Shown: in pieces, positions 7,632-8,835 of the stretch
Position numbering within the stretch: position 1 is the first letter of the stretch
How the letters are laid out: the number at the start of each line of letters is the position of its first letter
NCBI RefSeq assembly: GCF_006345805.1
Contig: NC_043011.1
Coordinates: forward strand, 47,938,464-48,002,463
DNA from: Octopus sinensis
Taxonomy: Eukaryota
Reading direction: 5' to 3'
Length of the DNA: 64,000 bases
The notes under the pieces: model-generated
The model's database searches: none
What the model was told of the DNA's origin: nothing
The model's input: only the letters and a program-made list of their open reading frames with translations
Position numbers and translations under genes: made by a program

Positions 7632-8381
7632 AGGAGAGCATCAATAATAACCATGCCTATTGATTTAGTCACTTCCAGAATTGTTAATTTTTACCTCCCT
7701 ATATCTCAAACCTTTTGCAGCCTTTTAGATTTTTGCAAAGAACAATAATAGAATACTTAGTAACCATAGATATTATAATGCATACTAGAAAAACCCTACT
7801 ATTTCATAAGGTTTCATAAGAGCAGCATAAGGATGGGAAAATACCCCTGATCCAATAAATGTTTTTTTCCCTTTTTTTAATGCAAATATAGAATTATATG
7901 CTAGTACACATATATATGTAATTAAATAGGATGCTACGTTTTAGATGTACTTACTTAGAAATCTACCATGATAGATTTTGAGGGGTTTTATCTAAAAGTA
8001 CAACTAATCATATATTAGACAACAAATTGATGAAAGTCCTCAGCCTTAGTACTTCCAGCCTTAAAATAACTATAACAACTAACTTACTATTTATTTTCTT
8101 GATGTTGCATTAAATTTAAGAGCTTCCACAAATCTTTCAATAACTGATATATATATATATATATATATATTATGTGAAATAGAAAGATGAATAATCTTGT
8201 AGTAGATTAATCAAAAGTTTAACCGATACCTTAGTAGCAAAAATCACAGCAGTGAACAGCACGGTTGGAGGTACAACCATCTGGCGTTGCAACCGTGCGT
8301 TGATGCGGATAATTGAAATTAAAACATTATTGGTGAATTGAAGAAATGGAGCTGAACGCAGATTGAACAGAAATCGTTTTA

Positions 8382-8470
8382 TTTCATTCTACACGTGTTT
8401 CGAAAGGCACAAATTACCAAAATCCGATTGAATAATGGGACCATATTGTGTCTTTCTCTTCAGGAAGAAA
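8382..8470 (-). ncRNA. Type I hammerhead ribozyme (left arm)
   Basis: Reverse complement reads TTTCTTC-CTGAAGA-GAAAGACACAA..TTGTGCCTTTC-GAAAC-ACGT-GTA-GAATGAAA. Confidence 0.8.
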
Positions 8471-8645
8471 AAAGGAAATCCGTTGGAAAAACAAAAACAG
8501 AACAGAGGCAGAGCAAAAAAACAAATCGAACTGTGCTCCTAAGAGCCCATGGCGAAACAGTTTCGCCATGGGCTCTTAGGAGCACAGTTGATTTGTTTTT
8601 TGCTCTGCCTCTGTTCTGTTTTTGTTTTTCCAACGGATTTCCTTT

Positions 8646-8734
8646 TTTCTTCCTGAAGAGAAAGACACAATATGGTCCCATTATTCAATCGGATTTTGGT
8701 AATTTGTGCCTTTCGAAACACGTGTAGAATGAAA
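8646..8734 (+). ncRNA. Type I hammerhead ribozyme (right arm)
   Basis: Stem I 8646-8652 pairs with 8727-8734 (one bulge). CTGAAGA is 8653-8659. Stem II 8660-8670/8704-8714 pairs 10 of 11 and closes with G-C. GAAAC is 8715-8719, stem III is the palindrome ACACGTGT, and the predicted GUA cleavage is after 8726. Confidence 0.8.
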
Positions 8735-8792
8735 TAAAACGATTTCTGTTCAATCTGCGTTCAGCTCCATTTCTTCAATTCACCAATAATGT

Positions 8793-8835
<43 letters not shown>

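What the first reader, a model, noticed from the sequence alone, without database searches (positions are those of the whole stretch)
8171..8793. 471-bp fold-back palindrome with a canonical hammerhead ribozyme in each arm
Seen: arms 8323-8558 and 8560-8793 are inverted copies around a single A, differ by only two 1-bp indels, and sit between (TA)n tracts. Each arm encodes a complete type I hammerhead on the strand pointing away from the centre: CUGAAGA, a 10/11-bp stem II closed by G-C, GAAAC, a palindromic stem III (ACACGUGU) and a GUA site. Established: Penelope-like elements carry hammerheads in their pseudo-LTRs, often with short palindromic stem III that needs dimerisation, and they often have 5' inverted partial repeats. 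Inference: this is a non-coding, non-autonomous PLE or retrozyme-like insertion made by snap-back during reverse transcription. A read-through transcript would form a 235-bp dsRNA hairpin, while a transcript of one arm could self-cleave.
Basis: partly seen in the sequence, partly recalled or inferred. Interest (0 to 1): 0.9.

Follow-up and report, generated by a model that had tools for sequence, protein, structure and literature searches.

The report
Inverted Penelope-type hammerhead fragment in octopod DNA
A real 471-bp palindrome in an octopus-like genome carries a hammerhead-ribozyme motif in each arm and looks like an ordinary, dead-on-arrival fragment of a Penelope-like retrotransposon inserted into a (TA)n microsatellite; this is a known kind of structure, not a new one.

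Summary
Arms 8323-8558 and 8560-8793 are inverted copies around A8559 and differ only by two 1-nt indels. Each arm carries, on the outward-pointing strand, a type I hammerhead motif: all invariant core bases, a G-C-closed 10/11-bp helix II, a palindromic ACACGUGU helix III and a GUA site. A motif this good occurred 0 times in 4.9 Gb of random sequence. "Canonical" is too strong: Rfam RF00163 aligns full length but scores 14.8 bits against a threshold of 34, helix I is weak, and the monomer fold is not the energy minimum.

The host is an octopod cephalopod. In Octopus vulgaris, Penelope-like elements (PLEs) make up about 6.8% of the genome.

The anatomy matches published PLE insertions: strong 5' truncation, an abutting inverted partial copy, a hammerhead near the 3' end, a (TA)n target and a one-sided extension. 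Opposite-strand hammerhead pairs 100-700 bp apart are already described.

I found no RT or GIY-YIG coding sequence in the window. I could retrieve no sister copies, so conservation, PLE homology and cleavage remain untested.

Verdict: a new member of a known kind, probably young and non-functional. Interest 0.3.

The parts
8147..8170 (.). (AT)12 microsatellite. Left flank; proposed left half of the (TA)n insertion target.
   Evidence: TRF: period 2, 12 copies, 100% matches.
8171..8322 (-). One-sided 152-nt extension of the left copy, absent from the right arm. Either the 3' continuation ('tail'-like) of the element or pre-existing flank DNA. The sense (-) strand has a 9+4-bp stem-loop at about 8255-8300.
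   Evidence: Unique in the window (blastn). RNA fold -30.9 kcal/mol, z -2.1, 9 of 200 shuffles as good.
8323..8558 (-). Left arm, 236 nt. Element sense strand is the minus strand, with the 3' end pointing left. It carries the extra G at 8528 and the extra A in the run 8515-8521.
8382..8471 (-). Type I hammerhead motif of the left arm. CUGAAGA at 8463-8457; predicted cleavage between 8390 and 8389.
   Evidence: Descriptor hit. Identical to the right copy over 100 nt. Own covariance model scores 130.5 bits.
8559..8559 (.). Apex: a single unpaired A between the arms.
8560..8793 (+). Right arm, 234 nt. Element sense strand is the plus strand, with the 3' end pointing right. It ends 67-70 nt after the cleavage site, directly at the microsatellite.
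8645..8734 (+). Type I hammerhead motif of the right arm. Helix I 8645-8652 / 8727-8734; CUGAAGA 8653-8659; helix II 8660-8670 / 8704-8714 with a 33-nt distal loop; GAAA 8715-8718; palindromic ACACGUGU 8718-8725; cleavage after A8726.
   Evidence: Rfam RF00163 aligns full length at 8647-8732, 14.8 bits, E 0.42.
8794..9040 (.). Compound TA/TACA/CA microsatellite. Right flank; proposed right half of the (TA)n target, later expanded or compound.
   Evidence: TRF rows 8793-9040.

Best explanation
The interval 8171-8796 is one dead-on-arrival retrotransposition product of a hammerhead-bearing Penelope-like element (PLE), or of a short non-autonomous derivative mobilised by one. It inserted into a (TA)n microsatellite of an octopod genome.

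Proposed sequence of events (inferred, not shown):
1. The PLE endonuclease nicked the AT-rich target.
2. The free 3'-OH at 8170 primed cDNA synthesis on the element RNA, producing the plus strand 8171 to 8558. This copies only the 3'-terminal ~390 nt of the element, hammerhead included.
3. At 8558/8559 the reverse transcriptase left the RNA and copied its own nascent cDNA back (snap-back or template switch at the small natural hairpin GAAA-CAG-TTTC). This produced 8560 to about 8796.
4. That end was then joined to the other side of the (TA)n target.

The result is two head-to-head, 5'-truncated copies whose 3' ends and hammerheads point outward.

The hammerhead is of the invertebrate type I kind: a 2-bp helix III capped by a palindromic tetraloop. 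That kind needs two sense copies to build an 8-bp intermolecular helix III. Here the two copies lie on opposite strands, so no single transcript holds two sense copies. The locus itself is therefore most likely catalytically and transpositionally inert.

Shown here: the sequence anatomy, the motif's statistical significance, the folds and the host clade. Inferred: the PLE origin, the order of events and the inertness.
For: - The palindrome is exact apart from two indels, and symmetric to the base at the apex.
- Complete hammerhead core and three helices in type I order. The full-length RF00163 alignment gives the same parse.
- 0 comparable motifs in 300 shuffles and in 4.92 Gb of random sequence.
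- Helix II forms in the unconstrained MFE. The dimer is -45.3 kcal/mol against 2 x -16.9 through ACACGUGU pairing, and the full double-hammerhead is -39.5.
- Both ends of 8171-8796 abut (TA)n.
- No coding capacity in the element or anywhere in the window.
- The host is an octopod. The window's SINE core is 80-92% identical to an Argonauta hians locus. Octopus vulgaris has 190 PLE families covering 6.83% of the genome, some of them young (PMC13282606).
- PLE insertions are strongly 5'-truncated, often have an inverted 5'-truncated copy abutting the 5' end, a one-sided tail, hammerheads near their 3' ends and a microsatellite insertion bias, with (TA)n reported for Naiads and marked as a preferred target in that paper's figure 1 (PMC8557442).
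- Pairs of PLE hammerheads 100-700 bp apart on opposite strands are described. So are G10.1-C11.1, a long helix II and a palindromic helix III (PMC4209133).
- A purified PLE protein nicks AT-rich DNA, extends from both strands and starts RT at alternative internal sites about 85-92 nt downstream of the hammerhead cut site (PMC11167929). Here that distance is 67-70 nt.
- Zero substitutions between the arms imply a young event: under about 1.8 My, using the JC 0.09 = 25 My calibration of PMC13282606 (own calculation).
Against: - No homology to any PLE sequence could be tested, and no RT or GIY-YIG is within 64 kb.
- No sister copy was found anywhere: window blastn, own covariance model over the window plus 20 kb of Argonauta, ORF-based searches, and collection scans. 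There is therefore no conservation or covariation evidence.
- The Rfam score is well below gathering.
- Helix I has only 3 contiguous pairs before a mismatch, and it fails a descriptor requiring 4 contiguous pairs.
- The one-sided extension is 152 nt, not the published 30-40 nt.
- A DNA-level fold-back duplication would give the same final sequence.
Confidence: 0.62

Rival explanations
1. The hammerhead-bearing repeat is genuine (a PLE or retrozyme-derived solo copy), but the palindrome arose later at the DNA level. A break in or near the fragile (TA)n tract, followed by fold-back priming at the short GAAAC-A-GTTTC inverted repeat and fill-in synthesis, would duplicate about 235 bp in inverted orientation. 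Reverse transcription would not be involved.
For: The near-zero spacer and base-perfect symmetry are what fold-back repair produces. The right arm ends directly in a long compound microsatellite. The arms are unequal: the left copy continues for 152 nt.
Against: Inverted 5'-truncated partial copies are a documented, frequent product of PLE integration itself (PMC8557442). PLE protein acts on both strands (PMC11167929). Both ends of the whole 8171-8796 unit abut (TA)n, as expected for a single insertion into one microsatellite.
Confidence: 0.17
2. The hammerhead resemblance is coincidental. The element is a palindromic fold-back or MITE-like DNA element, or a hairpin-RNA / small-RNA precursor locus.
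For: Rfam hammerhead scores only 14.8 bits against a gathering score of 34. Long-hairpin miRNA models score higher in raw bits. Helix I is weak and AU-rich. The hammerhead fold is not the MFE for the monomer or for the whole arm. TA dinucleotides at both ends could be read as a TA target duplication. There is no homologue to show conservation.
Against: 0 motifs of this quality in 4.92 Gb of random sequence, and about 1 at the next looser tier. All invariant core bases, G10.1-C11.1 and the family-typical palindromic helix III are present together. The miRNA hits are all far below their gathering scores and simply reflect any long hairpin. A TA duplication is uninformative inside a (TA)n tract.
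Confidence: 0.1
3. Assembly artefact: a fold-back chimeric read or mis-join created the second arm.
For: PLE tandem/inverted structures are known to cause assembly problems (PMC8557442). The only differences between the arms are two 1-nt indels, one of them in a homopolymer, which is typical of long-read error. A difficult microsatellite lies directly adjacent.
Against: The arms are short (235 bp) and internal to the window. The sequences beyond them are not inverted copies of each other: unique DNA on the left, microsatellite then other sequence on the right. A fold-back read artefact would mirror everything out to the read end.
Confidence: 0.05

Closest known systems
Hammerhead ribozymes in the pseudo-LTRs of Penelope-like elements, including pairs on opposite strands (Cervera & de la Pena 2014, PMC4209133)
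   Same: Type I topology, long helix II, G10.1-C11.1, a small palindromic helix III implying action as a dimer, mostly solo or truncated genomic copies, and pairs 100-700 bp apart on opposite strands. Here the cleavage sites are 336 bp apart.
   Different: [quoted passage not shown] Helix II is even longer (11 bp plus a 33-nt structured loop). No PLE ORF or PLE sequence homology is demonstrated. The host is a cephalopod, for which I found no specific hammerhead description in the searchable literature.
Complex tandem/inverted PLE insertions with 5' truncation, an inverted 5' partial copy, a one-sided tail and microsatellite targets (Craig et al. 2021, PMC8557442; Frangieh et al. 2024, PMC11167929)
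   Same: Head-to-head 5'-truncated copies with 3' ends outward, (TA)n on both sides, an extension at one end only, and the hammerhead a few tens of nt upstream of the 3' end.
   Different: The extension is 152 nt rather than 30-40 nt. Both copies are extremely short (about 240 and 390 nt) and no full-length partner is present.
Metazoan non-LTR retrozymes (Cervera & de la Pena 2020, PMC7229834; Li et al. 2026 preprint, 10.64898/2026.07.22.740005)
   Same: [quoted passage not shown] These are proposed to derive from PLE pLTRs, and solo monomers are common.
   Different: The defining direct tandem repeats, which allow dimeric cleavage and circRNA formation, are absent. Here the two units are inverted.
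Twin-priming and snap-back inversions of LINE-1 and other target-primed retroelements (own knowledge)
   Same: Inverted, 5'-truncated copies generated during a single target-primed reverse transcription event.
   Different: L1 twin priming gives arms covering different parts of the element, with an internal junction. It does not give a base-symmetric palindrome.

Membership tests
Hammerhead ribozyme, type I (Rfam RF00163) | Invariant core: C3 U4 G5 A6 N7 G8 A9, G12 A13 A14, A15.1-U16.1, H17 | tested here: met
   CUGAAGA 8653-8659, GAAA 8715-8718, U8725, A8726.
Hammerhead ribozyme, type I (Rfam RF00163) | Three helices around the core, with helix I open-ended | tested here: met
   Helix I 7/8 pairs, with only 3 contiguous pairs at its base. 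Helix II 10/11 pairs. Helix III is 2 bp plus the ACGU tetraloop, or an 8-nt palindrome.
Hammerhead ribozyme, type I (Rfam RF00163) | Covariance-model score at or above the curated gathering threshold | tested here: not met
   No hit at gathering or at E<=10 on 751 nt. Full-length alignment at 14.8 bits against 34, E 0.42, when 110 nt are searched alone; the 51-nt helix II insert is penalised.
Hammerhead ribozyme, type I (Rfam RF00163) | Core conservation and compensatory stem changes among homologues | tested here: inconclusive
   The only two copies are identical over the motif. No other copy was found. The tools hold no eukaryotic genome DNA collection.
Hammerhead ribozyme, type I (Rfam RF00163) | Mg2+-dependent site-specific self-cleavage | not testable with these tools
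   Needs in vitro transcription. Predicted site: after 8726 (+) and after 8390 (-).
Penelope-like element (PLE) insertion | ORF with a telomerase-like RT and a GIY-YIG endonuclease | tested here: not met
   Pfam finds nothing in 135 stop-to-stop segments across the window. This is expected for a strongly 5'-truncated copy, but it means membership rests on non-coding anatomy only.
Penelope-like element (PLE) insertion | Hammerhead motif in the terminal repeat, near the 3' end | tested here: met
   The cleavage site lies 67-70 nt from the arm end. The published PAc geometry is about 85-92 nt (PMC11167929).
Penelope-like element (PLE) insertion | 5' truncation with an abutting inverted 5'-truncated copy | tested here: met
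   Head-to-head arms with 3' ends outward. Feature described in PMC8557442.
Penelope-like element (PLE) insertion | Insertion into AT-rich or (TA)n microsatellite DNA | tested here: met
   (AT)12 at 8147-8170 and TA-rich array from 8793. Published target bias.
Penelope-like element (PLE) insertion | Optional 30-40-bp tail at one end only | tested here: inconclusive
   A one-sided extension exists (8171-8322) but is 152 nt. It cannot be told apart from flank DNA without other copies or an empty site.
Penelope-like element (PLE) insertion | Sequence homology to the pLTR or 3' end of an autonomous PLE of the same genome | not testable with these tools
   No cephalopod genome or repeat library is reachable. 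The supplements of PMC4209133 and PMC8557442 are not held, and the one held for PMC13282606 has no sequences.
Metazoan PLE mini-hammerhead (Cervera & de la Pena 2014) | [quoted passage not shown] | tested here: inconclusive
   G10.1-C11.1, the palindromic helix III and the long helix II are met. The extra nucleotide is absent. The motif fits better the 'less atypical' variants with a small palindromic helix III reported in flies, rotifers, shrimps and mosquitoes.
Metazoan non-LTR retrozyme | Direct tandem repeats of 170-400-nt units, each with a type I hammerhead | tested here: not met
   Only an inverted pair is present. No direct copy in 64 kb.
MITE / fold-back DNA transposon | Terminal inverted repeats with a fixed target-site duplication; many copies | tested here: inconclusive
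   The whole arms are inverted repeats. A TA duplication cannot be judged inside (TA)n. No second copy in the window. Genome-wide copy number is not testable.
miRNA / hairpin-RNA precursor | Match to a curated precursor family or small-RNA evidence | tested here: not met
   MIR8562, MIR5048, MIR847 and others all score far below gathering (118 against 211, 96 against 160, 70 against 184). These are generic long-hairpin matches.

The most novel reading that the evidence does not exclude
The inverted pair is not just debris. It could be a retained hairpin-RNA locus: read-through transcription (either strand) gives a 235-bp perfect dsRNA (-416 kcal/mol) that feeds siRNA or piRNA silencing of the hammerhead-bearing PLE family in octopods. 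Alternatively, divergent transcription from the apex could yield two sense hammerhead RNAs that cleave each other in trans as a bimolecular double hammerhead. Either way, the unusually long, structured helix II would define a cephalopod-specific hammerhead subclass.
Probability: 0.06. Interest if true: 0.6.

Novelty: new member of a known kind. Interest (0 to 1): 0.3.

Why it matters
The main value is in annotation. It is a clean, young, nearly mutation-free example of the fold-back products that PLE integration leaves behind, and it sits in a clade (octopods) where PLEs are abundant but their ribozymes are little documented.

If sister copies confirm the family, three things would follow. The base-symmetric apex and unequal 3' ends could inform the still poorly understood PLE integration mechanism: snap-back versus dual-strand priming, and alternative RT start sites. 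The long helix II would add a variant that current Rfam thresholds miss. The locus could also be checked as a natural dsRNA source against PLEs.

It does not open a new question or overturn anything.

Tried and rejected
- Rfam at gathering on the whole window and at E<=10 on 751 nt gave no hammerhead. Only the 110-nt search did.
- I tried using spurious ORFs across the element as handles to find the locus or sister copies in public assemblies. The exact look-up was not on record, the word-indexed homology search gave nothing, and the exhaustive HMMER scan of 1.84 billion representatives gave only two weak multi-stretch hits, which I took to be low-complexity matches.
- Exact and gapped DNA patterns returned 0 hits in every collection scan: viral contigs, metagenome contigs (both scans used) and genome contigs. 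These collections are essentially non-eukaryotic, so the null result says little.
- Literature string searches for the core sequence returned only unrelated primers. The supplements of the key papers are not held or hold no sequences.
- Pfam on window ORFs found no RT, EN or transposase. A retroelement-like ORF at 58891-59310 gave only weak, unnamed homologues.
- My own covariance model, run with filters off over the window plus 20 kb of Argonauta hians, matched only the two known copies. The antisense strand scored 18.4 bits, which I attribute to the helix II hairpin being shared by both strands; everything else was noise.
- I considered pure dual-strand target-primed synthesis (two independent cDNAs) and ranked it below snap-back. 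Independent truncations would not end at the same nucleotide, unless both ran off a defined RNA 5' end with the apex A as a non-templated addition. The apex is not at this hammerhead's own cleavage site.
- I considered and rejected a second hammerhead at the apex. On the + strand, 8539-8563 reads CUAAGA-GCC-CAU-GGC-GAAAC-A-GUU, which lacks the essential G5, and its 'helix III' is created by the palindrome centre itself.
- The exact host species was not determined; only the order-level placement is supported.
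Full report
**What is there.** The region contains a genuine, nearly perfect palindrome. The repeat finder gives arms 8320-8520 / 8596-8796 and 8517-8558 / 8560-8601. A global alignment of 8323-8558 against the reverse complement of 8560-8793 shows no substitutions and exactly two 1-nt gaps. 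These are an extra G at 8528 and one extra A in the run 8515-8521 of the left arm, around a single A at 8559. As RNA the 471 nt fold into one hairpin of -416.5 kcal/mol, z = -49. The window holds no other copy of the arm or of the adjacent 152 nt (blastn).

The right arm runs directly into a compound TA/TACA microsatellite (8793-9040). On the left, 152 nt of unique sequence (8171-8322) separate the arm from (AT)12 at 8147-8170. It is therefore the whole interval 8171-8796, not the palindrome alone, that sits between (TA)n tracts.

**The hammerhead claim.** A descriptor for type I hammerheads finds exactly two sites in both strands of the window: + 8653-8726 and - 8463-8390. Pair by pair:
- Helix I, 8645-8652 with 8727-8734, has 7 of 8 pairs (three pairs, a C.U mismatch, then four pairs including a U.G).
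- The core is CUGAAGA.
- Helix II, 8660-8670 with 8704-8714, has 10 of 11 pairs, is closed by G10.1-C11.1 and carries a 33-nt structured distal loop.
- GAAA follows.
- Helix III is A15.1-U16.1 and C15.2-G16.2 capped by ACGU, so the segment ACACGUGU is fully self-complementary.
- The cleavage site is GUA, with cleavage after A8726.

All invariant core positions are present.

Chance is excluded at any reasonable scale. Dinucleotide shuffles of the window give 0.013 loose hits per window and none of 300 at the observed quality. In 4.92 Gb of composition-matched random sequence there were 1140 loose hits, one hit with a G-C-closed helix II of at least 10/11 pairs, and none of the full observed quality. 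Because the two arms are copies, this counts as one independent observation.

Rfam is less generous. It gives nothing at gathering score on the window and nothing at E<=10 on 751 nt. When 110 nt are searched alone, RF00163 (Hammerhead_1) aligns over its full length (1-45) at 8647-8732 with the same parse as mine, including a zero-loop palindromic helix III. The score is only 14.8 bits against a gathering score of 34 (E 0.42), and helix II is treated as a 51-nt insertion. 'Canonical' is therefore too strong. This is a hammerhead-family motif with a weak helix I and an unusually long helix II.

**Folding behaviour.** Helix II forms in the unconstrained MFE. The monomeric hammerhead fold (-12.2 kcal/mol) lies 4.7 kcal/mol above the MFE (-16.9). 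Two copies gain about 11.5 kcal/mol (-45.3 against -33.8) by pairing their ACACGUGU segments. The complete double hammerhead, with helices I and III both intermolecular, is -39.5 kcal/mol. That is more stable than two monomers but is not the dimer MFE. In a whole-arm transcript, the arm's 5' end GUUUCG pairs with the core CGAAAC and the hammerhead is not in the MFE. This matches what is published for animal type I hammerheads with a 1-2-bp helix III and a palindromic loop: they are inactive as monomers and act, often weakly, as dimers (PMC4209133; PMC7229834).

**Host and context.** The window is extremely rich in microsatellites and SINE-like repeats. One SINE-derived ORF has as its only recorded relative a hypothetical protein of Argonauta hians. 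The fetched A. hians locus shares a 113-bp SINE core at 80-92% identity with at least 12 copies in the window. Argonauta is an incirrate octopod, so the window comes from an octopod cephalopod; the species was not determined. In Octopus vulgaris, Penelope-like elements are 6.83% of the genome (about 191 Mb, 190 families), and some insertions are young (PMC13282606). A PLE fragment in any 64-kb octopod window is therefore expected. No RT, GIY-YIG or other domain is detectable in 135 stop-to-stop segments of the window. The element itself has only short accidental ORFs.

**Comparison with known PLE anatomy.** Craig et al. 2021 (PMC8557442) describe PLE insertions as follows:
- They are strongly 5'-truncated.
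- They have a short extension ('tail') at one end only.
- They carry hammerheads near their 3' ends.
- They are biased towards microsatellite targets, with (TA)n reported for Naiads and marked as a preferred target in that paper's figure 1.

Cervera and de la Pena 2014 (PMC4209133) already report pairs of PLE hammerheads 100-700 bp apart on opposite strands. They list a long helix II, G10.1-C11.1 and palindromic 15.2-16.2 / loop 3 as family traits. Frangieh et al. 2024 (PMC11167929) show that a purified PLE protein nicks AT-rich DNA, extends from both strands and starts reverse transcription at alternative internal sites some 85-92 nt downstream of the hammerhead cut site, which explains the tail.

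Here the hammerheads point outward, the cut site lies 67-70 nt from the arm end, both ends of the 626-bp unit abut (TA)n, and one copy is 152 nt longer at its 3' end. Every non-coding hallmark is present in kind. [quoted passage not shown]

**Most likely history (inferred).** There was one target-primed event in a (TA)n tract. cDNA primed at 8170/8171 copied the last ~390 nt of the element RNA. At 8558/8559 the enzyme switched to its own nascent cDNA and copied it back for about 237 nt, and the end was joined to the other half of the microsatellite. The base-exact symmetry of the apex argues for one arm being copied from the other rather than for two independently truncated cDNAs. The alternative is that both strands primed and both cDNAs ran off a defined RNA 5' end, with the apex A as a non-templated addition. 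I cannot exclude this. A DNA-level fold-back repair next to the fragile microsatellite would give the same sequence, and that is the main rival.

With no substitution in 234 aligned bases, and using JC 0.09 = 25 My (PMC13282606), the duplication is younger than roughly 1.8 My at 95%, unless the arms homogenise each other (own calculation).

**Function.** Dimer-type hammerheads need two sense copies. A single transcript of this locus contains one sense and one antisense copy locked in a 235-bp duplex. The locus is therefore most likely inert as a ribozyme and as a transposon. Its only plausible activity is as a dsRNA source, which is speculative.

**What could not be done.** No tool here searches eukaryotic genome DNA. 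ORF-based handles, pattern scans of the viral, metagenome and prokaryote collections, paper supplements and my own covariance model over 84 kb of octopod DNA all failed to yield a sister copy. Three things therefore remain untested: core conservation and covariation, homology to an autonomous PLE, and read-level support for the palindrome.

**Verdict.** It is a new member of a known kind, and a specialist would not be surprised by it. Interest 0.3.

Noticed in passing
window 8539-8563 (+), mirrored on the - strand: Next to the apex the sequence reads CUAAGA-GCC-CAU-GGC-GAAAC-A-GUU. This is a hammerhead-like box lacking the essential G5. Its 'helix III' (AC-A-GU) is created by the palindrome centre itself. 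It is probably chance plus a by-product of the palindrome, and not a ribozyme.
   Followed up: partly
window 8255-8300 (- strand sense), inside the 152-nt extension 8171-8322: A stable nested stem-loop (9 + 4 bp; GCACGGUUG...CAACCGUGC). The whole 152 nt fold at -30.9 kcal/mol, z -2.1. It could be a 3'-end recognition or RT-start hairpin if the extension belongs to the element.
   Followed up: partly
window 3-76, 6360-6456, 11457-11534, 14422-14533, 18309-18401, 31483-31595, 37302-37414, 41125-41231, 43648-43744, 44945-45052, 50878-50973, 56812-56918; L001:10040-10152: A SINE-like repeat with at least 12 copies in the window. Its 113-bp core is 80-92% identical to a locus of Argonauta hians, where it is annotated as a partial hypothetical protein. 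This is what places the window in Octopoda.
   Followed up: partly
window 16757-16996, 27963-28196, 36180-36479, 37653-37988, 40140-40415, 43052-43426, 48130-48555: A second dispersed repeat family, recognisable from recurring translated motifs (e.g. ...LQSDLAVFLQLDALPNANHS...). Not classified.
   Followed up: no
window 58891-59310 (+): A 140-aa open segment resembling the C-terminal region of retroelement polyproteins. It has no Pfam match and six weak unnamed or misnamed homologues in ENA, Logan and JGI contigs (59% identity at best).
   Followed up: partly
window 47196-47247 (-): A relaxed mini-hammerhead descriptor (U3-A8 core variant UUGAUAA, helices of 4/4/2 bp) gives one hit. This is at chance level.
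   Followed up: no
window 51756-54446 and 60941-62441: Very long compound microsatellite blocks (TACA/TA/CA/TC-rich; ATT/AAT and poly-purine runs). They give a strong local GC skew (0.44) and AT skew (0.24) at 52001-54000.
   Followed up: no
window 8490-8519 and 8597-8626: Inside each arm there is a degenerate 11-nt tandem (AACAAAAACAG x 2.7, 63% matches). One of the two arm-distinguishing indels lies in the adjacent A-run.
   Followed up: no
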